64,000 nt of DNA from Octopus bimaculoides (taxonomy: Eukaryota), in the NCBI RefSeq assembly GCF_001194135.2, contig NC_068987.1, positions 54,057,822 through 54,121,821 on the forward strand, written 5' to 3'. This document shows, in pieces, positions 1 to 49,629 of the stretch; within the stretch, counting starts at the first letter, position 1; each line of letters begins with the position of its first letter. Both the position numbers and the translations under genes were made by a program. A model generated the notes under the pieces. The model saw only the letters and a program-made list of their open reading frames with translations. It did no database searches and was not told the origin of the DNA.

Positions 1-11
1 AAAAATCTTAC

Positions 12-41
12 ATCGGAGCAGCAGGTTCCTCCACAGTTTCT
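12..41 (-). CDS. 30-nt phase-2 small exon (ETVEEPAAP); gene continues left of the window
   Basis: ttttaatttcaatacag|A GAA ACT GTG GAG GAA CCT GCT GCT CCG AT|gtaaga. Confidence 0.7.
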
Positions 42-119
42 CTGTATTGAAATTAAAACATATATTTTAAATTTTACGCAAATGCATAAATGTATGCACA
101 CAGACGTTCAGTGCATTCA

Positions 120-182
<63 letters not shown>

Positions 183-849
183 AACACATAAACACACACA
201 CACACACACACGTATATATGCAAACATACGTATATACAAAGATTTTGCAGAAGCTCAAAATGTTTGTATCAGAAAGTATGGAAAATATTGATACTGTCTA
301 ATAACTAAAAACTTTTTCACTAAAATATTGATATTAATCATTTCACGTCTACTCTGAAATAATGCTTAATGTTATTAATATCCTCCATAAACTTGATAAC
401 TTAAAACGGTATATTACTGGTACTGGCAATTATTTCTTTGAAAAGAGAAACACACTTCGAATGAAACGAACTGCAAGTAAACTTAGTCTAACAATCTCAA
501 ACAAAAACGTACATGAATTTAATAACAACTGAAGTATAAAAGCAAGCATTTTCTTATCTGTTTGTTAGGGTTTCTGGTTTTATATAATCACAGAAAAGAT
601 TCACACAAATGTGAACAAAACTAAAACAAAATATATAACAGAGTGAATAGTAGTTAATTTCTTGGAAAATGTTAGGTTTCCTTAATAAGTTAAAAAGGAG
701 AAAGATTAAGAAAGCAGATGTTACTGAAAGAGATATATTTGATCTGAAAAAGGTAGAACAAGTTTACTTCGACTAACAGACTCACTATGTTTCAACTAAA
801 CAAAAACAAAACAAATGTTCAAAGGAAAATATTGATGCTGTTAACTTAC

Positions 850-876
850 ATCTGGCTAGTCTCTTCGGTTGATTGC
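850..876 (-). CDS. 27-nt phase-2 microexon (QSTEETSQ[I])
   Basis: ttttgtttttgctattcag|G CAA TCA ACC GAA GAG ACT AGC CAG AT|gtaagt; phase 0 contains TAG and phase 1 creates a stop at the next junction. Confidence 0.7.
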
Positions 877-1115
877 CTGAATAGCAAAAACAAAATATTC
901 TTAGCAATAATCCAAATTGCTCAACACCATGGTTAATGATATTACATCCATATATCAAAAGCAAACAAAAAAAAAATTATAAATATATATAAAATTTTAT
1001 TTCTCGTCTTGTTTTCTTTTTTTATGATAAAGAAAAAGAATTAATTTCTTTCGGTCATGCGCAAAAGCAGTTAAGAGCTAAGAACACTTAGAAATTTCAC
1101 ACATTTTTGTTATAG

Positions 1116-1157
1116 TTGCTAAATTTGAAATAAAAACTTTTAACGACACCAAGAGTG
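1116..1157 (+). CDS. Candidate 42-nt phase-1 exon of a possible antisense nested gene (AKFEIKTFNDTKS)
   Basis: tttttgttatag|TT GCT AAA ... AAG AGT G|gtgagt; phase-compatible with the candidate at 2198. Confidence 0.25.
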
Positions 1158-2128
1158 GTGAGTAATACAGCAGACGGGAACGCTAATTGCAAACTCGTTT
1201 GATTCAAACTTATTAGATTTGAAACAATCGTCTTTACCTTATAAAATTCACTTTCATGAAATATCTTAATCCGATAGGAAAAGCTATGCGGATCTATTTT
1301 TTGAGACAGCAGAATTTGTACGTATTCACATCATTGACAATATCAATACTTTAGTCCATCAGAAGGAAATTCTTTGTAATATTTGTTTTGCCTAAGATGT
1401 ACAAACAATACTTTGTCACTACTGCCGTTTAAAATTGAATGAACATATACTTGCGGCTTTCTGAAAAACCTACAACAAATATCGCTACTGTCCAAAAAAT
1501 TCTTGATAAAAAATTTTATAAAATAGAATAAGCATTGATCCGGAATTTTTCCAGAATCTTATCAGGCATTCGACTATCGTCTTAATCTGAGAGACGGATT
1601 TGTTTTAACTTCTTATTTACGATGAAAATTAAATATGTTCTAGGATTGCAAAAGCAAACCAAATTAAGATATAGGAGACATCTATCATGGAAATTGATGC
1701 TTCCAGTTTGTTCACTTTAGTATGTAATCAAAAGTTTGGATACTCATTTCTGTTTTCTTTGGCGAAAACAAATGTTTGGTTGCTTAATGTTTTAAAGTTT
1801 AAATAAAAATATGTCCATTTTGTCAAACGTATTTTGTAAATACTTTACGATAAAAGAATTCTTGTATTGATATTTTTTGGATGGAAATATCGGTATACAG
1901 TTTAATTTCATTGTTTATTTGCATTATGTTCTCTTTTCACTGGAGCTGAGATTGACAGTTCACCTTCTTGACTAAAAAGATACTTATCAGATGTTTATGT
2001 TAACATAAGGCTCTCACATAATGTCCGCTTGAAAAAGCATCTAGAATTCAATAGTCGGCATATAGATCGAGTTTTAATCTCAGTTGTTATTGATCTAGCC
2101 GTTACTACCCCATTTTATTTCCAGGTAG

Positions 2129-2170
<42 letters not shown>

Positions 2171-2197
2171 TAATCAATGTGTCCTTTCTTTTTCAAG

Positions 2198-2445
2198 ATG
2201 GTAATGTGGATTTGGCTGTCATTACAGGAAGAAGAAACGAAACTATTTCATCGTATTTCAGTGTTAAAGAATCTAATCACTGTGATTATAAATGCAAGGA
2301 CAAACTAATTGAACAAATAAAATATTACACGATCGGCTCAAATATCAATCCACAGATAATATTTTTTTCAGATACAGCAAAGGAAGTTTGCAAAACAGCT
2401 TCAATTAAATACGAGTTTCAATGTAACATTGATGAAGGAACATGA
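2198..2445 (+). CDS. Candidate terminal coding exon, about 82 codons, 4 Cys, unknown product
   Basis: gtcctttctttttcaag| acceptor, open frame DGNVDLAVITGRRNET...QCNIDEGT*, stop overlapped by AATAAA. Chance in AT-rich DNA is not excluded. Confidence 0.3.
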
Positions 2446-3171
2446 ATAAAGTAAATTCCTCAACCCTTTGATTTCAATATATGCCGCTATGGTTTAACCC
2501 CACTTCAGTCCTGACCACTCTACCTTTTTTCTCAGATATAGTGTATTTAAGACTATATTTTAAGCTGCCAGGAAGAGTCACAAAAAAATTTCTTGCCATT
2601 TTTAGCCAATCGCGTGACTACAGAGAAGTTATTTGTGTTGCTGCAGAGGTGTCGTTACTATGCGTTTAATTGTTTAAAAAAGCATTGGTTTACAACAAGC
2701 AAGGTACAGCAAACTAAATTTGAAGTTAATAAAGAAAAGCTGCTGCCGAGTAAATGTTGCTGGAATAGGGAAGTCAAAATATTAAGATTTGATAAATTGA
2801 TTATTACCAACTGAATACCTTTAATTTTGAAATATTTTGTAGCGATCGGGAATAGATTTACTTAGTGTCAAAAGAATTTTAAAATACCATAATGCCTTTA
2901 CGTATACCGTTTCCATATCTCAGTACTTCGTATCTTGCTCTGCACATTGAGCGTAACCAGATTTTAACTGGTCGATCTCAACTTCTACGATCAATTTTAT
3001 GTTATTAATGATTATTGCTGAAAGAATTACCGATGGATATATGCAAATATCCATTTTTTCTTTACTGTTTTTTAGGGTTTTTTTCTTCTTTTTGTTGTGG
3101 GTGTTATATTTAAAACCTAAAGATACTGCAACATCGATATGTTACAACAAACCAAAAATGTGCCTCTTTAC

Positions 3172-3177
3172 TCTTCT
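3172..3177 (-). CDS. Possible 6-nt phase-2 microexon (adds E-E)
   Basis: tttgctcttttactgctag|A GAA GA|gtaaag; preserves frame and fits the acidic composition, but a 6-nt match can arise by chance. Confidence 0.35.
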
Positions 3178-3986
3178 CTAGCAGTAAAAGAGCAAATTGT
3201 TTCATTTGCATTGCAAAAGTATGAAAGATATTCCTGTTTACTCAGACAAGAAGCAGTTTAATCCTTTAAAGAGATAAAATCACTTTCAGATTCAAATTGG
3301 CTGTGCTTGAATAAAACTATGTCACAAAAGAAGCCGATCGAAAACTTCATACGCTCGGCCTAAACGTGATCAGTTAATTTTTCTTCTTAAAGATTCGAGG
3401 CACTTGAAATATATTGTCCAGATATTAAAGAAACTGTTTGATTATTTAAGAATGATCTGGTTGGAGACACAAGCTATTAGATATAGAAATGAAATTATTT
3501 TAAAATAGGCATCAGTCATTTTGTGGGCTTCTAATGATATTAACGTAATTATATTTCGCTAAAATAATTCTCGCTTGGATTCTAATGATTCATTTATGCA
3601 TTTTAAAGTAGAATTACCAGACTAAACCTCTTAAAACACCCGTTAGTATCTTCCTAATACCAGTAACAGAATAACTTTACCAACTCAGAGAAAATGTATG
3701 ACTAGTCAAATACCGTAAATCTCAAAACATTCATCAGAATTTTGTGAGGAGAGTAAAAACACTTCATTAATTTTATGAGATGTGGAAACAACGTTGTTAG
3801 GAAAGAAAAATGGAAGTTGATTTCTGTTCATTTAATTGCAAGCAGGTAGAATGCAATTAATAATTCACCGTGGTAAATAGATAAATCGATGGGTAGATAA
3901 ATATAAGCATGGGGATGGGAAAAAATGCAGTCATAGCAAGTAAACGAAACCTCATATTTTGAGAAATTACAAAAGCTCTCACTTAC

Positions 3987-4010
3987 ATGAAGCCAGATGC
4001 TGGAGACTCC
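3987..4010 (-). CDS. 24-nt phase-2 microexon (ESPASGF[M/I])
   Basis: attctgccattttcatag|G GAG TCT CCA GCA TCT GGC TTC AT|gtaagt. Confidence 0.7.
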
Positions 4011-6506
4011 CTATGAAAATGGCAGAATAATGCAAATTGACGTTTGATTTAATAGCAACTAAGAAAGCGGATTAAATTGCAATTTTTGTCGTTGTTATTG
4101 TTAAAAGAAGCTAATGTTATATAGTGTGTTGGAATTGTTAGCAGCATTGACTTCTTACTTTAATTATATCTGCAAAATTATTTTTCATAAAAACTAAATC
4201 AATAAGCTTATTATCGAAGACATCATTATTATCATTATTATTATAAATAAATTTTACAAGCAGCCAAATTGCGTAAAAGCAACTACACTCAAGCAATTTA
4301 ATTACTAATGTCTCGACTAGCATCTATAAATTCATATTATAACAATAGACTAGAAAATTTAAATGGATGCAATTCAGGTCTTACAAGTGAATAAATATAT
4401 AAGTAAATAACATGCACTGTCTTATTGGTTAGGAAAAACTAGATGACTACACAGAAGGTGATGTTTACTATATATAATGTTTTAATTGAACAATATGGCA
4501 AACTTAACCTGAAAAGGAAACCTTATTTAACAAAAAAATGGTAGAAACGAATCTAAGTTAAAACTTGTAGACTAAGTTTGAAAACAAACCAAAACACAGT
4601 CTAAAAATAAGAGTTTGTAGTTGGAAGAAACATCAAGATTCTGAAAGAAGGAAAGTAGAAAAACAGAAAAAAAGATTTCTATTAAAAGAAGAAACAGGAG
4701 AGATATATTATTCTTCAAGTTCATAAAGAAAGGAGGTAATTAATAAAAAGGAATGGATGAAATTAAGTCTTGTGAGTGTTAGTTGAGAGCTCAGGAGTCT
4801 ATTAGCAATTCTTAAATAGTATATATATATATATATCTTAAGAGCTAACTTATAATTTAGAGATAGCAGAATTGTGCCGAGACACAATGTCAGATATGAG
4901 GTGTTGCTCCGTTAGGTCATAATCCTTGATTTTTGATCCGTTGCAGATAAATTCTGGCCACAATACTTAATTCCACATGACGTCAGTTCATGGCTTCTGG
5001 GAATAGGTAATCTGCATAAGATTGAAGTCTTATTTAGAAAGATATGTTTATCCTATTCGCTTGATTCAGAAACAACCGTTGAGCAAAAGAACTGTGGACA
5101 ACTCTCTGGAAGTCAAACTCATCAAGTCCAGAAAATAAGTAGCATCAATTATTTGTCGACATGCTGAGTAAGTCAAAAGTCTTGGGGTTAGCTACCTTTT
5201 TATTTTTCATTTTTCTAAGTTAGACCTTTGACAAAAGAAAGTTACGTGGCATTTTGCTTAATTATTATCGTCTCTAAGTTATATGAAATGCATTACAACA
5301 AACTTCATTTACTTGTATGAGTTTTCTTCTCATTAGATCAGCCTAATAAAAATGTATTTATTTCCCAGTATACCGCTTCAGTAATTATAATTTAGTTGAA
5401 TTAATTGTGTCACTCTCACTTCACGGTTTTACTCTTTTACTCAAAGATTGTTTCTGCAAGCTATAAACTTAATTATTTAATTTTCTAAATAGAGTATTTT
5501 ATAAAAAAAAAAAAGACTCTTAAAAAAATTCAATCAAACTTCCTCTAAAGAAAGTGCAGTCTTTTCCACGAAAGGACATTATGATCCAGAGCTTAATTTC
5601 TACATCTTAAGTTTTGCAATTACTAGATTAATATGTCGACCCTTGGTATAGATTTGGGTCTTTTATCCCCACTGGTATCCGTTTGGCCTAGTCGTTAAAT
5701 GAAGTCCTGGGAAGTATTTATTTTCCAGTAGTGATTTCACTGTAAATCTGACAAACGTTTTAAACTACAATACGATATTTTTCGATTTTAGCGTAATGAT
5801 TCGATTCTATTATTGAAAACAAAAATATAGATTTACATTTTATTTCTTTTATGTAATATGTCTAACGATCAAAATTATTTCTCTTTCGTAGCAGAATGAT
5901 TTCTTTTTCTTTTGTTTTTGCTGTATCTAATTGTATTGTTTATTCTGTTGTGCTTCTTTACGTTTTTTTTTTTGGTTTGCTGTTTTTTTTTTTTTGTTTG
6001 TTTTTTTCAGATTTCTATTAAATCTTGATTAATTTCTTTTCAACTACATTATCGTCTGCAATTATTTTTTTTAATATAATTTATTTCCTGAAAATTCTTT
6101 GTATGTCGATCTTAATATCTGAATTATGGTGGCTCACATACTGCAATCTTATTAAATAATTAATCGTATTAAGTGAATCCAAAAATAATAATTTTTGTGC
6201 TTAGTTATCACAGAAGATAAATTAATATTTCAAAATTATTCTTCCACTACATTCTTTCTCTATATCGATTGTTGTCGGTGTCACACATATACCATAACTA
6301 AAAGAATTGCATAGACGCGTGTAAGGTGAGAGGAAGAAATCGAACAATGAAAGTCTTTAAGATGGATTTTGGTCAAAACTGACTAAGACTAGAATAAGAA
6401 AACCATTCGTTAATTAAGCTACCATCCAAGTCAACGTGCATTTTGAAAGTGGTGAAAAAGGAGAGGATATCAAAGATTTCATCTATATTTCTATTACTAT
6501 ACTTAC

Positions 6507-6521
6507 TCAGTCTGTTCCTCA
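6507..6521 (-). CDS. 15-nt phase-2 microexon (EEQT[E])
   Basis: ttcttgttctttttcacag|T GAG GAA CAG ACT GA|gtaagt; length divisible by 3, phase 0 begins with TGA, phase 2 matches the preceding exon. Confidence 0.65.
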
Positions 6522-7974
6522 CTGTGAAAAAGAACAAGAAATTAAGAAAAAATGATTTTATTTAATTGCTGGATATATCAAAGAAAATACAAGAATTTAA
6601 ACAAAAAATACACATTCAAAACGAAAAGGCAGTGCGAAAATATCTTTTAAAGACTTGGACTTAATCCTAATTCGTATTTATGTGATCTAAAAAAGCAAAG
6701 GAAAAAAAATTTTAAACACAAATAATACATTCGTATATTTAGAAATATTGATTATATCCATTTGGTCTTTAGACATTTTGCTTTTAATTTTGGAATGAGA
6801 AACAAAATCGTCCGTCTAATATCTCTGATACACTTTTCATTGTTCCTTGAAAAGTGGCAAACTCAACTCCTTCGAGATATCCGCACTGATCTGGATTCTT
6901 ACAATGAAACCGCATTAAAGCAATTTATCCATGGTTCCTACTTATTAAACCAACTCATAAGACGTACACTATAGAATTGGTAACAAATGTTTCCGTCTAT
7001 ACTTCAAGTTAAAAATGTCGAGATGTTTTTAGATTGGATAATCAAATTAACACACCGATTTGCATCAGTGCAATAATAGATTAGAAAATCACTTTTTTTT
7101 TATTCTTTCTTCTACGATGAAGGAAAATTTCCATTTAAATGTGAGACATCGTAACAAGTTATGTCAATGAAAATAATACGATGGTTTAGTGTCAACACCA
7201 GATGACGTTCGAGATTTTCAACAGATTAAAAACGTGTTAGACTTGTTGTTCCAGCTGCTCGCTATATTTATCCGAATATTATTTCATTAACAATATGAAT
7301 CTTAGCATTTTATTAGTAGAAATGTGTACCCTTTGTAACTCTCTGTTTGTCTCACACCCCTACATATATATGTGTGTGAGTGTACACTAAACATAATTTC
7401 CTTTTCTTTGGTTTTCTTTTTGTGGCTTCATAATTTGAAATGCAGCGTATAAGCATAACTTTTTAATAAATATACAATTTAGACTGCTTAGCCTATACTG
7501 AAAAAGCAAAAACAAAGAAATTGGTTACATTCAGATTTTATCGCACAGTTGAAAGACAAACTAATAAAAAGGAGAGTATTCTTTTCACTGATGAAGCTTT
7601 AACGAGGCTAGAAACTAGCCAGATATTTTACCGCAAAGTACACAACTATTTTATATAGCATGGTTACTCCAAACACTAGAATGTACAGAGAGACAAAATA
7701 CGCTTTCAAAAAGTGAGTAGTATAATAATTGGGGAAACTTAAAGTTACAGGCATCTAAAAAGAATTCTGTTAGAATACAAAAATACAAATATGATGGTGA
7801 AAGAACAGATTCTTCAAACATATAATAGATCGTTTGCTTCATATTCTTACACAATTATATCTTAGTGCGAATGTTCGTTTAATATTTATTCATTCGTTTT
7901 ATTTTTTATTCGTTATTATCATTATTTTAGTTCATTAATTTGCTTTACTACAGAAGAAAATGTTGTCTACTCAC

Positions 7975-7994
7975 GTATGGTCTTCCTCGTCCAT
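7975..7994 (-). CDS. Start-codon exon (full exon 7975-8021, 47 nt) of a microexon-built gene; encodes MDEEDH(T)
   Basis: Minus strand reads tttttttctctttcag|TTGTTGATAGCGTAAAAGAAACCAGCC ATG GAC GAG GAA GAC CAT AC|gtgagt. Strong acceptor and donor, GCCATGG Kozak context, in-frame TAA upstream of the ATG; ends in phase 2. Confidence 0.75.
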
Positions 7995-8297
7995 GGCTGG
8001 TTTCTTTTACGCTATCAACAACTGAAAGAGAAAAAAACACGGTGAAAAATCAATGAGCTAATCGATCACACGGTGACTCACAAAAGAACATGTATATATG
8101 TATTCATAAAAATATAACTTTTATGTATCGACACACACACATATATATATATATTCTTAGACATAGATCTATATGAATAGTTTTTTTTTTACACACACAC
8201 ATAGATATATATATACACACAAATTGTGTGTGTGTGGTCATAATTTTTATATTCATACGGAAATACATATGCATATATAAGTGAAGAAGTATGTTTG

Positions 8298-8380
<83 letters not shown>

Positions 8381-8703
8381 TAATGTTCGTGTATATACAT
8401 ATATTCGTTTCGTGCGTGTATGTTATATAAGNNNNNNNNNNNNNNNNNNNNNNNNNNNNNNNNNNNNNNNNNNNNNNNNNNNNNNNNNNNNNNNNNNNNN
8501 NNNNNNNNNNNNNNNNNNNNNNNNNNNNNNNNNNNNNNNNNNNNNNNNNNNNNNNNNNNNNNNNNNNNNNNNNNNNNNNNNNNNNNNNNNNNNNNNNNNN
8601 NNNNNNNNNNNNNNNNNNNNNNNNNNNNNNNNNNNNNNNNNNNNNNNNNNNNNNNNNNNNNNNNNNNNNNNNNNNNNNNNNNNNNNNNNNNNNNNNNNNN
8701 NNN

Positions 8704-8755
<52 letters not shown>

Positions 8756-9692
8756 TCTTCTTTTAACTTTGTGAACTTTGTAGATTAGGTGTATTGATAA
8801 AAATAGACATGTGTATTATTTCTGGGTGTGTTGTATGTTTATGCATTTTAATTATTTCTGCCGTTTGTAACGTCTTTCGTTTTCAGATGTTATTCTGTTT
8901 TTTTCATTATTGAATTTTTATTGAGTCATGTTAGCATGTGAAAGAAATATAAATGATTAAAGCTAGAAACAAAAAAAAACTGAATTGCTACACATAATTC
9001 ACTTTGAAATAACCAACTTGAATGCTCGTTAGAATTCGTATTCATCCACTGTGTGTTCTTATAGCGTTTGAGAAGTATTCTTTCTTATACATAAAAGAAT
9101 TAAGCGCTTCTTTGAAAACATAAATTTTTTTTAGGTTAACACTACTGATTAAGCATGATTTAACAATATAATATGTAGGAAGCCTAGTAATACTATTTCA
9201 CAAAACTTACTTATATCTCTCCCATTAAGGAATCGGAAATTCGTTTTGTACACAAATACAGTGAATGTGTTTATATGCATTAAATATATTCGCTTAAAAT
9301 GTGTGGTCTTGCGTCTAATGTGAGCTTGAATACCACTCGTAACAGCCCAAGTAGAATTTTAAATGATCATGAATCACATGCAATACGCTTATATTCATGG
9401 TGTATCTGAACTATATATTGTTGAAATGATTATAATGCAGAACCATCATCGTCATTTATGGACCCAGTATATGATACACCTCGACTAATAAATTCTCTCT
9501 GGAATTTCAGTTTGTATGTCAGTGTTTGAGGGAAAATGCCCACCTCTATGCACTCTGTTACACTCCGCTATTCGTAAAGGAGCTAACTGAGGGTTAAACC
9601 GCTCGGATTTACAAACCTCCGCGTATTTGATGTGTGTATGTTTATATATATATATACACATGTATATACAAGTATATAAATAAACATATATA

Positions 9693-9807
9693 TTCCGGGT
9701 TCAGTCCCACTGCGTGGCACCTTGGGCAAGTGTCTTCTACTATAGCCTCGGGCCGACCAAAGCCTTGTGAGTGGATTTGGTAGAGGGAAGCTGAAAGAAG
9801 CCCGTCG

Positions 9808-9849
<42 letters not shown>

Positions 9850-10131
9850 CGTGTGTGTGTGTGTGTGTATGTTTGTGTGTCTGTTTGCCCCCCCCCCCAC
9901 NNNNNNNNNNNNNNNNNNNNNNNNNNNNNNNNNNNNNNNNNNNNNNNNNNNNNNNNNNTCCCTTGACAACCGATGTTGGTGTGTTTGCGTCCCCGTAACT
10001 TAGTGGTTCGGCAAAAGAACTGATAGAATAAGTACTAGGCTTACGAAGAATAAGTCCTGGTGTCGATTTGCTCGACTAAAGGCGGGGCTCCAGCATGGTC
10101 GCAGTCAAATGACTGAAACAAGTAAACGAGT
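9693..10131 (+). mobile_element. SINE family A copy (5'-truncated, internal microsatellite and gap)
   Basis: GGTTCAGTCCCACTGCGTGGCACCTTGGGCAAGTG...GCAGTCAAATGACTGAAACAAG shared with 7 other copies in the window. Confidence 0.9.
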
Positions 10132-10446
10132 ATATGTGTAGATTATATAAGCATACATTTAATAGTACTGATTCATCCCCCTCCTATTGGAGTTTCGCGT
10201 GAGTAGAACACATCTACATCATCAACTGTATTCGAAGATCTGATGAGGTGACTATATTGTTATGTGTTAATGCTTGCTTTTAAGTATAGTTATACTTAAC
10301 TGCAAACATTAAATTGACAGATGGCTCGCTATTTTCAAGTGGAGCAACGTATATTTTTACAAGGAAATTATCAGCTGCTTCGAAGGCTCGCGTTATTAGC
10401 CGTCATCAAACTGATCATCAGTAAAAGAGAGAAACAGAGAGAGTGT

Positions 10447-10481
<35 letters not shown>

Positions 10482-11724
10482 NNNNNNNNNNNNNNNNNNN
10501 NNNNNNNNNNNNNNNNNNNNNNNNNNNNNNNNNNNNNNNNNNNNNNNNNNNNNNNNNNNNNNNNNNNNNNNNNNNNNNNNNNNNNNNNNNNNNNNNNNNN
10601 NNNNNNNNNNNNNNNNNNNNNNNNNNNNNNNNNNNNNNNNNNNNNNNNNNNNNNNNNNNNNNNNNNNNNNNNNNNNNNNNNNNNNNNNNNNNNNNNNNNN
10701 NNNNNNNNNNNNNNNNNNNNNNNNNNNNNNNNNNNNNNNNNNNNNNNNNNNNNNNNNNNNNNNNNNNNNNNNNNNNNNNNNNNNNNNNNNNNNNNNNNNN
10801 NNNNNNNNNNNNNNNNNNNNNNNNNNNNNNNNNNNNNNNNNNNNNNNNNNNNNNNNNNNNNNNNNNNNNNNNNNNNNNNNNNNNNNNNNNNNNNNNNNNN
10901 NNNNNNNNNNNNNNNNNNNNNNNNNNNNNNNNNNNNNNNNNNNNNNNNNNNNNNNNNNNNNNNNNNNNNNNNNNNNNNNNNNNNNNNNNNNNNNNNNNNN
11001 NNNNNNNNNNNNNNNNNNNNNNNNNNNNNNNNNNNNNNNNNNNNNNNNNNNNNNNNNNNNNNNNNNNNNNNNNNNNNNNNNNNNNNNNNNNNNNNNNNNN
11101 NNNNNNNNNNNNNNNNNNNNNNNNNNNNNNNNNNNNNNNNNNNNNNNNNNNNNNNNNNNNNNNNNNNNNNNNNNNNNNNNNNNNNNNNNNNNNNNNNNNN
11201 NNNNNNNNNNNNNNNNNNNNNNNNNNNNNNNNNNNNNNNNNNNNNNNNNNNNNNNNNNNNNNNNNNNNNNNNNNNNNNNNNNNNNNNNNNNNNNNNNNAT
11301 ATATATATATATATATATAATTACACAAGACATGAAGACGATTAGACTTTTAAGATATTCTTTTCTTTACAAAGAACTTTATTGTTAATGTACTGAGAAA
11401 ATTTTAAATGGTTTCGTTTCTTTAGAACAACTGTAATTTTTGTGTTAAAATAGGGCTCCATCAAATGAAAAACATGGTCGCTTTAAATACATGTAAAACT
11501 AGACATTTTATATTCAATTTAAGTAGTATTCCTTTTCTTCAAAGAGACAATAGTATTATTGTTAAGCATGAACGCATATTCACGGAATCTCTCATCACAT
11601 CTTCTTACACTCACATATATATACATACATTACATGCATGTATGAGTGTGCATATATGCGCGTATGTATGTACCTGTGAGTGAATGTATGCATGTATCGG
11701 TGCTTATATGTAGGCAGACATACT

Positions 11725-11921
11725 GCTTTCAAATTGCGGCACAAGGCCAGCAATTTCGTGGGGAGCGATTACATCGACCTCAATGAATGATACTTATTTT
11801 ATCGACTCCGAAAGAATGAAAAGCAAAGTCGACCTCGGTGGAATTTGAACTCAGAACGTAAAGACATATGAAATGCTGCTAAGCGTTTCGCCCGGCGTGC
11901 TAATGATTCTGTTCGCCACCT
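11725..11921 (-). mobile_element. SINE family B copy
   Basis: Reverse complement of GGCAGAATCGTTAGCACGCCGGGC...GAGTTCAAATTCCGCCGAGGTCGACTTTGC, repeated more than 10 times in the window. Confidence 0.85.
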
Positions 11922-11951
11922 TATATATATATAGAGAGAGAGAGAAATATA

Positions 11952-12153
11952 CGAGGCGTTGTTGAAAAATTCTTAGCTTTGGGCAAAAGAAAATAAAGGA
12001 GGATCAGTTGATTATGATTTTTGCAACATATTCTCTTCTCAAATTCACACACTTATTGCAATGGTCCTTCAGTTTTTCTAAGCCCCGTAAAAGAACTTGG
12101 AAGTTTGAGCCTCCAGCCAGACCTTTCGCGAGGAACTTTTCAGCACCCCCTCG
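11952..12153 (-). mobile_element. Mariner-derived MITE (202 bp) retaining the transposase C-terminus
   Basis: Imperfect TIRs CGAGGCGTTGTTGAAAAATTC / CGAGGGGGTGCTGAAAAGTTC, TA on both flanks; minus frame GLEKLKDHCNKCVNLRREYVAK resembles the mariner C-terminal GIxKLxxRWxKCIxxxGDYVEK motif. Confidence 0.8.
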
Positions 12154-17274: not shown

Positions 17275-17660
17275 TGGCTATGTGGTAAGTAGCTTCCTTA
17301 CCAACCACATGGTTCTGGGTTCAGTCCCACTGCGTAGCACCTTGGACAAATGTCTTTTACTATAGCCTCGGGCTGACCAAAGCCTTGTGAGTGGATTTGG
17401 TAGACGGAAACTGAAAGAAGCCCGTCGTGTGTAAGTACATATGTGTGTGTTTGTGTCTGTGTTTGACACCTACCACCATCGCCATCGTTTGACAACCGAT
17501 GTTGGTGCGTTTACGTCCCCGTAACTAAACGGCAAAAGAGACCGGTAGAATAAGTACTAGGCTTATAAAGAATAAGTCCTGGGGTCGATTTGTTCGACTA
17601 AAGGCGGTGTTCCACCATGGCCACAGTCAAATGACTCAAGCAAATAAAAGAATAAAAGAA
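17275..17660 (+). mobile_element. SINE family A, near full length, tRNA-like head
   Basis: Box A-like TGGCTATGTGGTAAG, box B-like GGTTCAGTCCC, A-rich tail. Confidence 0.9.
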
Positions 17661-20640: not shown

Positions 20641-21041
20641 ACTCTTTTAATTGTTTCAGTCATTTGACTGCGGCCATGCTGGAGCACCGCCTTTAGTCGA
20701 GTAAATCGACCCCAGGACTTATTCTTTGGAAGCCTAGTACTTATTCTATTGGTCTCTTTTGCCGAACCGCTAAGTTACGGGGACATAAACACACCAGCAT
20801 CGGTTGTCAAACGATGTTGGGGGACAAACACAGACACACAAACACACACACATATATATATACATATACATATATATACGACGGGCTTCTTTCAGTTTCC
20901 GTCTACCAAATCCACTTACAAGGCTTTGGTCGGCCCGAGGCTATAGTAGAAGACACTTGCCCAAGGTGCTACGCAGTGGGAATGAACCCGGAACCATGTG
21001 GTTGGTAAGCAAACTACTTACCACACAGCCACTCCTGCGCC
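20641..21041 (-). mobile_element. SINE family A, full length
   Basis: Reverse complement of the 17275 copy, with internal (CA)n/(TA)n. Confidence 0.9.
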
Positions 21042-32499: not shown

Positions 32500-33075
32500 A
32501 TTATTATTGAGTGAGAAAGCATTGCATGCCATCAAAGTAACACTGATGTACAAAATATACGAAACTCATTATACCGATCATGACTACTCGCCTGATAAGG
32601 GTATACCAGGCACGTATATCACAATCAATGAGCGTGACATGTTGATCTCATATCAAGATAAACAGCGCATGACTTTGCAGGTGAGGCCCATTTAGAATTT
32701 TCTTCAGGTTGAGTAGCCCATCCAGCTCAAAAGGTAACTGAATAAGATTTGTTTAAGGATGATGAACGAAACACCGATGTTTCCAAAGGTGAATTATTCA
32801 AACCCTAAAGAATTCCTCTTAGCACATGTCTATGACACTTCCCCACTTACTCCTGCTCATGATCAGAGATGCTCATATCGTCAGACACTAAGGGACAAGC
32901 ACGACAGGTGAAAGTTAAACAACTGACAAGCAAATCTGTGGTATTGAGTAGAATATTTGTTGTCGCCCATCTTTTACACAAAGACACCGAGACAAAACAT
33001 ATACATGTTGACACTTCCAATCAGTTAAGATCAGAAGCCGTGAAAGCCACTGCCTGATATTGCATCAGGGCATTT
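32500..33075 (+). mobile_element. Interspersed retro-like repeat bounded by (ATT)n, 3' stem-loop
   Basis: About 575 bp of GC-richer sequence flanked by (ATC/ATT)n; terminal hairpin tgcctgat-attgc-atcagggca before the (TTA)n tail. Confidence 0.6.
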
Positions 33076-36565: not shown

Positions 36566-36963
36566 CTTTTATCCTTTTACTTGTTTCAATCATTTGACTG
36601 CAGTCATGCTGGAGCACCGCAATAAAGGGATTTTTAGTCGAAGAAATCGACCTATTGACTTATTCTTTGTAAGCCTAATACTTATTCCATCGGCCATTTT
36701 TGCTAAGTTACGGGAACGTAAGCACACCGCCACCGGTTGTCAAGTGGTGGGGAGGGGAACAAATACAGGCAAAGACATACACTTAAATAAATACATATAC
36801 AACAGAATTCTTTCAGTTTCAATCCACCAAACCCACCCACAAGGCTTTGGTTGACCCGAGGCTATAGTAGAAGACATTTACCCAAAGTGTCCCGCAGTGG
36901 GACTGAACCCGGAACTATGTGGTTTGGAAGCAACCTTCTTACCACACAGCCACAGCTTGCGCC
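36566..36963 (-). mobile_element. SINE family A, full length
   Basis: Same head and tail motifs as the other copies. Confidence 0.88.
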
Positions 36964-37350
36964 TATATGTGTGTGTGCGTCTAAATATATACAAACTGAT
37001 CGTCCTTGGGTCAAGTAACCGGAAGAGGAGTCTAGGTATATTTTTCTGTTATATTTGTGCATTTGAAGAAGACATTCTCTGTTTAAACATTTACCATACA
37101 TTACAGGGTTGGTTTTAACTTTCAGTCTTCCAGATTATGAAAACGTTGACAGAGTCCCTAGCATAAATTTAATTCAGTTCTATAAACGCTTTCCAATTAA
37201 TTTTATAAGTTGGTTTGGCGCAGGATTTAACTTGGGTTAGCAACTGATATCTTATTACTCAGTGGCTTGGAAGAGCAGAGAAGGCTGGACCAATAATGCA
37301 ATGTACAAACAACCGAGGTATCGATTATTCATTTCCTGTCATCGATGTTT

Positions 37351-47469: not shown

Positions 47470-48376
47470 CGTGCGTGCGTGTGTTGCAATGTTGTTAGTT
47501 CGATGCCAATAATTTCATGTAAATAATATTCGCAGTTATTGAATCATAGTTTGAATAATATTGGCAGGTCAGTCATTCTTGTCTGCTTGAATGAAAACGA
47601 AAGACCAAAAGAGATTTCGCATGCTTGCCTTTCTCCAGTTAATTAAGCCTTTTGTCTTTCTCCCATCTGTTACTCTACTAAATCTCGCTTACATTCAACA
47701 GTAGCAGTAGTACAAACAGTAGTGACATTATAGCACAAACATATCACTCGATTTGCTAACAGTAACAACCAATTCATCCTTAAATCACATCCCACCGCCT
47801 CAGAAAAAATAAACAAATGAGTTGAAGGTGATTTGGCTTTATTCCTAGCAGGTCGAGTTACCTAGTTGAGGCCCGACCATGGCCACTTATTGGTTGGTCT
47901 TATTAACGGTGTAAATTAATGATGACAATGTTGCGTTTTGTTTGATTCTTGCTTGCTTTTTGTTTCTTTTTATAGCCAACAACTGCGATGCCATCTTAAC
48001 TTGCTAGCGGCCTATTATCCATTTCATGTATACTGTACTATATTATATATTTTTCAGCTTGCGAATGCTTTCTGTATATGTCTACAGAGATAAAAACCCA
48101 TTAATAAAATTAGATGGCCCAATATGCATTTAAAACATATTCGTGAAAGCTAGCTCGATTCATAAATCACAGACGTGATTTAGCCAAAACAATATGTACG
48201 GGTAGATATAAACCTCTTGTTTGATGAAATCCTATACCAGGAGTGAAACTAGTTTGGCTGATTTCGTTTTACTGTGCATGAAGACAATGTGTATACTGAC
48301 AAGGTGTGTACCTCTGTCCATACATAAAGTGTTGCCTATAAATATATTTATAGGTCTACAAATATATTCTTTAATA

Positions 48377-49629
48377 CAGGGGTATACAACAGGCTGCCTG
48401 TTGACTCTCCTAAACTATGTGGCCTGACAACTGATGGGGTACCCTCAATGACAGGTAGAATTATTGGCAGGTATAACCAAGAAATATTTGAATACCATCT
48501 GTTCGCAAGAGGTTGTGGTGAATCACAGCATTATACACCAGAAAAAGCTTGTGCAGAAAAATACTCGGCTTTACTGATGTTATGAAAAATGTTGTTCAAT
48601 GTGTAAATTACATTCGTTCTTGAGGACTAAATCATCGGCAATTTAAGGCCTTCTTAGAAGAACTTTACTCGGATTATCCTGATATTGTGTAATTCTCTGC
48701 AGTGCGTTGGCTCAGTAGAGCTGCTACTTTGAAAAGATTTTGGAGTCTAAGAAAGAAAATTGGATCATTCATGATAAATAAGCAACAAAATGTTCCTTAT
48801 TTAAATGATGATGACTAGTTAAATGACGTTGCTCTCCTAACTGACATAACACAATATCTTTCAGATTTAAATGTGAAACTACAAGGTAAAAGTCAGCTGG
48901 TGAACATGATGTTTGTACACTTTTTTCCTTTGAAGAGAAACTACGACTTTTTCAGATTCAGCTGAGTAGAACAACACCCACTCATTTTCCCAGTTTAGCT
49001 CACAGAAAAGCAGAAATGCTAGATTTAGATTGTTCCAATTGCTGAAAGTGTTGGCAAGTTATGTGCTGAATTTACAAGCAGATTTGCTGATTTCAGGAAA
49101 TGTGAAACTGAGTTTTCTCATCCATTTGACATGGCACCTGAGGACAATCCTGACTGGTGTCAAACGGAGCTAATTAATTTAGTTTGATATAGACTTGAGA
49201 AGAGCATATAATAGCAATGACTTGGTAACTTGCTACAAAAATTATGTACGCATCCAAATTTGGAGCAACATGCTAGGAAAATGACATCCCCCTTTTTGGC
49301 AGCACATGTTGTGAGCAGTTCTTCTCAAGAACGAAATTTACTAGAAACAGATACCGAAGTCAGCTCATAGATGAACATCTGACCAATCAGCTTCGAGTTG
49401 CTACCACATCAGTCAAAGCGGACATTGATAAATTGTACAAAAACCTAAAATAGCAAGTCTCACATAAATAAAACTAAACTTTATTTTATTTGTCTTTGTT
49501 GTTTAAAAATATATTCATGACTCAATACACTAGTTGCCATTGGATAACATATTTTTGACGGTGACTGGCCCCAATTGTTGTTCCAATGTTCGAAAGTGGC
49601 CCGCCAATGAAAAATGTTGCATACCTCTG
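48377..49629 (+). mobile_element. Internally deleted hAT (SPIN/Charlie-type) transposon with dead transposase
   Basis: TIRs CAGGGGTATACAAC / CAGAGGTATGCAAC, 8-bp TSD ctttaata / ctctaata; residual IIHQ, VRWLSR (48702) and GST-CCEQFFS dimerisation-like motifs; stops and frameshifts. Confidence 0.9.

What the first reader, a model, noticed from the sequence alone, without database searches (positions are those of the whole stretch)
12..8021. Hidden gene built from a chain of frame-symmetric phase-2 microexons encoding an acidic N-terminus
Seen: five minus-strand exons (20 coding nt, then 15, 24, 27 and 30 nt) with canonical acceptors and GTRAG donors, separated by introns of 0.8-3.1 kb. All internal exons are multiples of 3 in phase 2 and splice to MDEEDHT-EEQTE-ESPASGFM-QSTEETSQI-ETVEEPAAP (13 of 38 residues D/E, no K/R, EE motif recurring). 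The other two phases hit stops. The six-frame track misses all of it. Known: short symmetric exons can be skipped without frameshift, and the acidic N-terminus of troponin T in vertebrates and insects is built from tiny alternative exons after a non-coding exon 1; Schistosoma micro-exon genes are similar but carry signal peptides, absent here. Inference: a combinatorially spliced acidic 'tuning' module, likely mis-annotated; the protein identity is unknown and troponin T is only an architectural analogy.
Basis: partly seen in the sequence, partly recalled or inferred. Interest (0 to 1): 0.85.

Follow-up and report, generated by a model that had tools for sequence, protein, structure and literature searches.

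The report
Acidic microexon chain, likely troponin T start
The five tiny minus-strand exons are real-looking and far beyond chance: they form the start of a protein-coding gene in an octopus-like genome, laid out like the start of troponin T genes, though the rest of the gene lies outside the window.

Summary
A start-codon exon (8021-7975; ATG 7994-7992, 20 coding nt) is followed by four exons of 15, 24, 27 and 30 nt on the minus strand. All have YAG acceptors and GTAAG/GTGAG donors. All splice after the second base of a codon. Spliced, they read MDEEDHTEEQTEESPASGFMQSTEETSQIETVEEPAAP. Exon G+C is 45-54% against about 29% around them.

Strict microexon criteria find five sites in the whole window on both strands. 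Four of them are these exons; simulation expects 0.008 per 8.1 kb.

This is the 5' end of a gene that runs off the left edge, not a whole hidden gene. I mapped annotated troponin T genes of a beetle, a butterfly, a tardigrade and a nematomorph. Each has the same layout: a short start exon ending two bases into a codon, then 1-3 symmetric same-phase miniexons encoding an acidic segment. Troponin T is therefore my leading identity (about 0.5), but it is unproven. The defining domain would lie outside the window, and the sequence similarity is only compositional.

No protein in the 5.8-billion-sequence database contains the peptide, although that database holds an Octopus proteome. Alternative splicing could not be tested. 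A new member of a known kind; moderate interest.

The parts
7975..8021 (-). Start-codon exon E1: acceptor (…ctctttcag at 8030-8022), 27 nt of 5' UTR (8021-7995) with an in-frame TAA, ATG at 7994-7992 in the context GCCATGG, and 20 coding nt (MDEEDH + AC). The donor GTGAGT lies at 7974-7969.
6507..6521 (-). Microexon E2, 15 nt. One leading base completes a codon and 2 bases are left over. It encodes (T)EEQT(E). Acceptor ttctttttcacag, donor GTAAGT.
3987..4010 (-). Microexon E3, 24 nt, same phase. It encodes (E)ESPASGF(M). Acceptor ctgccattttcatag, donor GTAAGT.
850..876 (-). Microexon E4, 27 nt, same phase. It encodes (M)QSTEETSQ(I). Acceptor tttttgctattcag, donor GTAAGT.
12..41 (-). Microexon E5, 30 nt, same phase. 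It encodes (I)ETVEEPAAP and leaves AT to be completed by the next exon. Acceptor tttcaatacag, donor GTAAGA at 11-6. The following intron runs off the window.
42..7974 (-). Four GT-AG introns: 7974-6522 (1453 nt), 6506-4011 (2496 nt), 3986-877 (3110 nt) and 849-42 (808 nt). They are AT-rich and contain microsatellites. They hold no other convincing exon, no RNA family and no long ORF.

Best explanation
These are the true first coding exons of a protein-coding gene on the minus strand of an octopus-like genome.

Translation starts at the ATG at 7994-7992. The N-terminal 38 residues are acidic, free of K/R and probably disordered. They are encoded by a short start exon and four symmetric microexons. 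Every intron falls after the second base of a codon, so any subset of the four microexons can be skipped without changing the frame. The gene continues left of position 1.

The most likely identity is troponin T, the tropomyosin-binding subunit of the thin-filament calcium switch. In vertebrate troponin T (from the literature read here), the N-terminal variable region is built from such miniexons, and their inclusion sets the charge of the N-terminal arm and through it calcium sensitivity.

Shown here: the exons, their phase, the start context and the match in layout to annotated troponin T genes.

Inferred: the troponin T identity, cassette splicing and the tuning role.
For: (1) The exon signals are far beyond chance. 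Exon G+C is 45-54% against about 29% locally.

(2) The ATG is the first in the exon, sits in the context GCCATGG, and has an in-frame TAA five codons upstream.

(3) Only one frame of the spliced chain is open.

(4) I mapped annotated troponin T coding sequences onto their genomic DNA:
- Beetle: start exon with 26 coding nt, ATG TCC GAC GAG GAA GAG GTT TAC TC|gtaagt, then 36- and 30-nt exons in the same phase.
- Butterfly: acceptor, 17 nt UTR, 23 coding nt ending TAT TC|gtaagt, then 42-, 18- and 18-nt same-phase exons, then a 28-nt exon returning to phase 0.
- Tardigrade: 26 coding nt, then a 24-nt same-phase exon that is absent from isoform X2, so it is a cassette.
- Nematomorph: 41 coding nt, then a 39-nt same-phase exon.
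- Window: acceptor, 27 nt UTR, 20 coding nt ATG GAC GAG GAA GAC CAT AC|gtgagt, then 15, 24, 27 and 30 nt in that same phase.

(5) The 5' alternatively spliced exons of human TNNT3 are likewise of one phase class (PMC2447309). They encode acidic segments that modulate calcium sensitivity (PMC8559874).

(6) The genome is octopus-like. The best named hit of a transposase remnant in the window is an Octopus vulgaris protein.
Against: - The Troponin domain (PF00992) and the tropomyosin-binding helices that define the family would lie outside the window and were not seen.
- Similarity of the peptide to troponin T N-termini is no better than composition gives: 17% of shuffled peptides score as well.
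- I could not obtain any mollusc troponin T for direct comparison.
- No database protein or assembled transcript ORF contains the peptide, so there is no expression evidence at all.
- The peptide is only 34% D/E and is rich in S/T/Q/P, so it is less acidic than most troponin T N-termini.
- Other genes with disordered N-termini could share this layout.
Confidence: 0.5

Rival explanations
1. The exons are real and form the 5' end of a gene, but that gene is not troponin T. It would be another protein with a disordered acidic N-terminal extension built from same-phase microexons, for example troponin I, another cytoskeletal or neuronal protein, or a lineage-specific gene.
For: All the intrinsic evidence for real exons applies equally. 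The sequence similarity to troponin T N-termini is only compositional. The peptide finds no Pfam family and no homologue. UGC lies 8-14 nt upstream of the acceptors of E3 and E4, which is reminiscent of neuronal microexons, though two of four is weak.
Against: The full combination matches all four troponin T genes mapped: an internal start exon with about 20-40 coding nt, an M(S)DEE-type start, a split after the second codon base, and a run of symmetric same-phase acidic miniexons. I know of no other family for which that combination is characteristic (own knowledge, not tested across a genome).
Confidence: 0.38
2. The five units are chance pseudo-exons in intergenic or intronic AT-rich DNA. 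They are not spliced, or are spliced only as noise.
For: There is no transcript, protein or conservation evidence. The peptide is absent from 5.8 billion database proteins, including Logan transcript ORFs and an Octopus proteome. It is also absent from JGI metagenome contigs and from the literature.
Against: Four strict microexon sites fall on one strand within 6.5 kb, downstream of an ATG in a good start context, all in one phase. Simulation expects 0.008. The rest of the 128 kb of both strands gives one such site, inside a repeat. G+C jumps by about 20 points exactly within the exon borders. Their absence from k-mer transcript assemblies is expected for 15-30-nt cassette exons, because such assemblies break at these junctions (inference).
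Confidence: 0.06
3. A micro-exon gene of the schistosome MEG type: a secreted, antigenically variable small protein assembled almost wholly from symmetric microexons.
For: The exon sizes (15-30 nt), the multiples of three and the introns of 0.8-3 kb resemble MEGs (bioRxiv 10.1101/2023.06.21.545858).
Against: MEG proteins begin with a signal peptide followed by a hydrophobic or aromatic motif, and they are specific to Schistosomatidae. Here the N-terminus is MDEEDHTEEQ…, with no hydrophobic stretch, and the genome is octopus-like.
Confidence: 0.02

Closest known systems
Troponin T genes: N-terminal hypervariable region (vertebrate TNNT1-3; arthropod, tardigrade and nematomorph TnT)
   Same: In the beetle and butterfly loci the start-codon exon is internal, preceded by an acceptor and a short UTR, as in the window. 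In all four loci it carries only 23-41 coding nt and ends two bases into a codon. It is followed by 1-3 symmetric exons of 18-42 nt in that same phase, with GTAAGT/GTGAGT donors in beetle, butterfly and tardigrade (weaker in the nematomorph), encoding an acidic segment with few K/R. At least one such exon is a cassette in annotated isoforms (tardigrade). The 5' alternative exons of TNNT3 are of one phase class.
   Different: There are four microexons here, against one to three in the loci I mapped. The start exon has 20 coding nt rather than 23-41. The introns are much longer (0.8-3.1 kb). The peptide is less acidic and richer in S/T/Q/P. The defining Troponin domain was not seen because it would lie outside the window.
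Schistosoma micro-exon genes (MEGs)
   Same: Runs of very short symmetric exons separated by long introns. Annotation pipelines have trouble with them.
   Different: MEGs encode secreted proteins with a signal peptide and a hydrophobic motif, and they are restricted to schistosomes. Here there is no signal peptide, the N-terminus is acidic and the host genome is octopus-like.
Neuronal (SRRM4/eMIC-dependent) microexon programme
   Same: Exons of 30 nt or less that preserve the frame and have strong splice sites. UGC lies close to the acceptor of E3 and E4.
   Different: Those microexons are usually single insertions within structured proteins (own knowledge). They are not a consecutive chain forming the N-terminus. 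I found no enrichment of Rbfox, QKI or PTB motifs, and two of the four microexons lack the UGC.

Membership tests
Troponin T (Pfam PF00992 Troponin; tropomyosin-binding subunit) | Troponin domain with the T1 tropomyosin-binding helix and the T2 region that binds TnI and TnC | not testable with these tools
   It would be encoded left of position 1. The window ends 11 nt after E5. No tool could extend the sequence.
Troponin T (Pfam PF00992 Troponin; tropomyosin-binding subunit) | Short start-codon exon that ends after the second base of a codon | tested here: met
   The window has 20 coding nt...CAT AC|gtgagt. Beetle 26, butterfly 23, tardigrade 26 and nematomorph 41 coding nt all leave 2 nt over.
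Troponin T (Pfam PF00992 Troponin; tropomyosin-binding subunit) | N-terminal variable region encoded by consecutive miniexons of one phase class | tested here: met
   The window has exons of 15, 24, 27 and 30 nt, each with 1 leading base and 2 left over. The same class is seen in the four mapped TnT genes and is stated for TNNT3.
Troponin T (Pfam PF00992 Troponin; tropomyosin-binding subunit) | Sequence similarity of the N-terminus to known TnT N-termini | tested here: inconclusive
   MDEEDHT resembles MSDEEEY(S/T). However, the best local score against 160 TnT N-termini (55) is reached by 17% of shuffled peptides.
Troponin T (Pfam PF00992 Troponin; tropomyosin-binding subunit) | Alternative inclusion of the miniexons and expression in muscle | not testable with these tools
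   No cephalopod transcript data could be reached. The peptide is absent from database ORFs.
Schistosome micro-exon genes (MEG) | N-terminal signal peptide followed by a hydrophobic or aromatic motif | tested here: not met
   The N-terminus is MDEEDHTEEQTEESPASGFM, with no hydrophobic run and a net charge of about -13 over 38 residues.
Schistosome micro-exon genes (MEG) | Restriction to Schistosomatidae | tested here: not met
   The best named relative of the transposase remnant in the window is from Octopus vulgaris.
eMIC/SRRM4-type neuronal microexons | UGC motif just upstream of the 3' splice site | tested here: inconclusive
   Present at -14 (E3) and -10 (E4), absent from E2 and E5. About 0.07 probability by chance on my rough estimate.

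The most novel reading that the evidence does not exclude
The octopus troponin T gene, or another thin-filament gene, carries an expanded battery of at least four independently skippable microexons that current octopus gene sets miss. This would give up to 16 N-terminal charge variants for tuning different muscle types (arm, mantle, heart). A second, alternative first coding exon may lie 25 kb upstream at 32887-32851, in the same phase.
Probability: 0.3. Interest if true: 0.5.

Novelty: new member of a known kind. Interest (0 to 1): 0.35.

Why it matters
If confirmed, the troponin T N-terminal miniexon array would extend to a cephalopod: the short start exon, the split after the second codon base and the run of same-phase cassettes. 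I mapped it here in four ecdysozoan genes, and a same-phase 5' array is reported for human TNNT3. That would support an origin in the bilaterian ancestor.

It would also flag a systematic gap in cephalopod annotations, because exons of 15-30 nt are missed. And it would give a handle on how octopus muscles diversify thin-filament regulation.

If the gene is not troponin T, it is still a clean example of a frame-neutral microexon chain building a disordered N-terminus.

Tried and rejected
1. Protein search with the spliced peptide. No candidate shares three 5-mers with it. The representative search refuses spliced sequences.

2. Attempt to reach a cephalopod troponin T so that I could fetch its locus and overlap it with the window.
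   - I used a Drosophila TnT core written from memory as bait. The 120 hits shown were dominated by arthropod TnT entries.
   - A search of the 50%-identity representatives with a copepod TnT gave further arthropod-like hits plus nematode, tardigrade and nematomorph TnTs among those I looked up.

3. Five window ORFs looked up as exact products, in the hope of a contig extending past the left edge. None is on record.

4. Degenerate DNA patterns for E5 and for the spliced E1-E2 junction in JGI metagenome contigs: 0 hits.

5. Literature searches for the peptide strings and for cephalopod or mollusc troponin T: nothing usable.

6. Rfam and tRNA scans of the window: nothing.

7. Splicing-regulator motifs (Rbfox GCAUG, QKI, PTB, MBNL, CELF) within 300 nt of the exons: no enrichment.

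8. Duplicated exon-plus-flank units as a sign of recent tandem origin: none, only microsatellites.

9. The bacterial promoter/terminator scan is not meaningful for this eukaryotic locus.

10. Pfam on the peptide and on the transposase remnant: no family.
Full report
**What is in the sequence**

- E1 (8021-7975) follows the acceptor tttttttctctttcag. It carries 27 nt of untranslated sequence, an ATG at 7994-7992 in the context GCCATGG, and 20 coding nt. It ends ...CAT AC|GTGAGT.
- E2 is 6521-6507 (15 nt), E3 is 4010-3987 (24 nt), E4 is 876-850 (27 nt) and E5 is 41-12 (30 nt).
- Each of E2-E5 follows a pyrimidine-rich YAG acceptor and precedes GTAAGT (GTAAGA for E5).
- The introns are 1453, 2496, 3110 and 808 nt.
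- Exon G+C is 45-54%, against about 29% in the surrounding 2-kb windows.

Every internal exon starts with one base that completes a codon and ends with two bases of the next. Spliced, they read MDEEDHTEEQTEESPASGFMQSTEETSQIETVEEPAAP, followed by AT. That is 13 D/E of 38 residues and no K/R. The other two frames of the chain contain stops. A TAA lies in frame five codons upstream of the ATG. The statement about stops is true of the chain as a whole. It is not true of every exon taken alone.

**Is it more than chance?**

A loose scan of the whole window on both strands gives 24 candidate small exons, and the five units are the best of them. The scan required a YAG acceptor, at least 70% pyrimidines upstream, a length of 9-60 nt and a GTRAG donor.

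A looser scan of the minus strand of 1-12000 finds no further exon of comparable quality between or around them.

I then applied criteria that E2-E5 all meet. The window has five such sites: E2-E5 and one inside a repeat at 20940-20920. Second-order Markov simulations of the region expect 0.008 per 8.1 kb, or 0.22 if the G+C filter is dropped. The criteria were chosen after the fact, so the nominal probability is too small. Even so, with the looser rate, four sites on one strand, in one phase and downstream of a well-placed ATG are very unlikely by chance. The exon regions are unique within the window and show no duplicated flanks.

**Surroundings and organism**

- The window is a draft eukaryotic assembly with 13 runs of N, many (AT)n and (GT)n tracts and several copies of a SINE-like repeat.
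- Rfam and tRNA scans find nothing.
- No long ORF in the window looks like a gene.
- A frameshifted hAT-type transposase remnant lies at about 48.3-49.5 kb on the plus strand. Its best named relative is a hypothetical protein of Octopus vulgaris, at 67% identity over half the query. Some other hits carry hAT dimerisation domains. So the genome is octopus-like.
- That result also shows the protein database holds at least one annotated octopus proteome.

**External evidence for the peptide**

- The spliced peptide, padded to 41 residues, shares three 5-residue words with no protein among 5.8 billion. That database includes eukaryotic RefSeq, UniRef and transcript-derived ORFs, as the troponin T search shows.
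- Degenerate DNA patterns for E5 and for the spliced E1-E2 junction find nothing in JGI metagenome contigs.
- The peptide strings occur in no paper.
- So there is no expression or annotation evidence for these exons.
- It is also what one expects for 15-30-nt cassette exons in k-mer-based transcript assemblies. That last point is my inference.
- I could not extend the sequence to the left. Five window ORFs are not on record as called genes.

**Testing the troponin T lead**

I could not obtain a mollusc troponin T.

- A Drosophila TnT core, written from memory and used only as bait, returned 120 listed hits dominated by arthropod TnT entries.
- A search of the 50%-identity representatives with a copepod TnT returned further arthropod-like hits. 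Those I looked up were nematode, tardigrade and nematomorph proteins.

I therefore tested the architecture instead. I fetched four annotated troponin T loci and mapped each protein onto its DNA with an exact spliced aligner.

| Gene | Start exon | Following exons |
|---|---|---|
| Beetle (Aethina) | an acceptor-like tctttttcag lies 24 nt upstream of the ATG; 26 coding nt, ATG TCC GAC GAG GAA GAG GTT TAC TC\|gtaagt | 36 and 30 nt, each 1 leading base and 2 left over; then a large exon entering with one base |
| Butterfly (Colias) | acceptor, 17 nt UTR, 23 coding nt ending TAT TC\|gtaagt | 42, 18 and 18 nt in that phase; then a 28-nt exon (GEGDPEFIK) returning to phase 0 |
| Tardigrade | 26 coding nt, 2 left over | a 24-nt same-phase exon, missing from annotated isoform X2 and so a cassette |
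| Nematomorph | 41 coding nt, 2 left over | a 39-nt same-phase exon |
| Octopus-like window | acceptor, 27 nt UTR, 20 coding nt, ATG GAC GAG GAA GAC CAT AC\|gtgagt | 15, 24, 27 and 30 nt in that phase |

For human TNNT3, the 5' alternatively spliced exons are reported to be of one phase class (PMC2447309). The variable acidic N-terminus is reported to modulate calcium sensitivity and tolerance to acidosis (PMC8559874).

The layout therefore matches troponin T in every feature the window allows me to test.

At the sequence level the match is not significant. MDEEDHT resembles MSDEEEY(S/T), but 17% of shuffled peptides score as well against 160 TnT N-termini.

**Most likely mechanism**

Shown:
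- a start codon in a good context;
- a frame-preserving chain of symmetric microexons;
- an acidic N-terminus free of K/R and without a signal peptide;
- identity of layout with troponin T 5' ends.

Inferred:
- The gene is the octopus troponin T (about 0.5) or another gene with such a module (about 0.4).
- The microexons are cassettes. Because each is a multiple of three in one phase, any subset can be included.
- In troponin T this changes the length and charge of the N-terminal arm. That arm does not bind other thin-filament proteins, but it alters the conformation of the tropomyosin-binding core and thereby calcium sensitivity.

I found no enrichment of Rbfox, QKI, PTB, MBNL or CELF motifs near the exons. 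UGC lies 8-14 nt upstream of two of the four acceptors, which is not decisive.

**Rivals**

- Chance pseudo-exons are unlikely (about 0.06), for the statistical reasons above.
- A schistosome-type micro-exon gene is excluded on two defining features. There is no signal peptide or hydrophobic motif, and the lineage is wrong.
- A different gene with the same layout remains fully open, because the defining domain is out of view.

**Novelty and verdict**

- The module is real-looking and frame-neutral.
- It is the 5' end of a larger gene rather than a hidden gene.
- Combinatorial splicing is untested.

This is a new member of a known kind. It would matter mainly as evidence that the troponin T miniexon array is ancestral to bilaterians, and as an example of microexons that cephalopod annotations miss. 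Interest 0.35.

In passing I noticed a second exon-like unit 25 kb upstream on the same strand (32887-32851). It reads cccttag|tgtctgacgat ATG AGC ATC TCT GAT CAT GAG CAG GA|gtaagt, has 26 coding nt, leaves two bases over, and is unique in the window. It could be an alternative first coding exon that would splice in frame to E2. This is speculative.

Noticed in passing
window 32851-32887 (- strand): A further exon-like unit: acceptor gtgcttgtcccttag, 11 nt, then ATG AGC ATC TCT GAT CAT GAG CAG GA|GTAAGT. It has 26 coding nt (the same number as the beetle and tardigrade TnT start exons) and leaves 2 bases over, so it would splice in frame to E2 (MSISDHEQ-D-EEQTE...). It is unique within the window. 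It may be an alternative first coding exon or promoter of the same gene, an exon of another gene, or chance.
   Followed up: partly
window about 48328-49450 (+ strand): A frameshifted remnant of a hAT-type transposase, with motifs ...KLCGLTTDGVPSMTGR... and ...LFGSTCCEQFFSRTKFTRNRYRSQL.... The best named hit is a hypothetical protein of Octopus vulgaris (67% identity over half the query). Some other hits carry PF05699 (hAT dimerisation). Pfam itself does not score the remnant.
   Followed up: partly
window 10045-10112, 17301-17510 (-), 20668-21005 (+), 36791-37115 (+), 61415-61798 (+), 62777-63103 (-): Several copies of one SINE-like repeat. Its spurious translations recur (...LLSVSVYQIHSQGFGQPEAIVKDICPRCYAVGLNPEPCGW). 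From memory it resembles the abundant octopus SINE. One copy produces the only false-positive 'microexon' under the strict criteria (20940-20920).
   Followed up: no
window 8432-8703, 9901-9958, 10482-11298 and ten further N runs: Thirteen assembly gaps (3613 N in all), mostly flanked by (AT)n or (GT)n microsatellites. Three lie within 3.3 kb upstream of E1, so a non-coding first exon or the promoter of the gene could be hidden in a gap.
   Followed up: no
L001 (ENA ERZ28675667 ctg52, an 879-kb contig): A long contig in an ENA 'metagenome' assembly carries relatives of the same hAT transposase (63% identity). It is probably host (cephalopod-like) DNA inside a metagenome assembly.
   Followed up: no
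P0081: An insect-type troponin T fragment (84% identical to the Drosophila bait) is deposited as a hypothetical protein of Clostridium perfringens. This is evidently contamination in a bacterial assembly.
   Followed up: no
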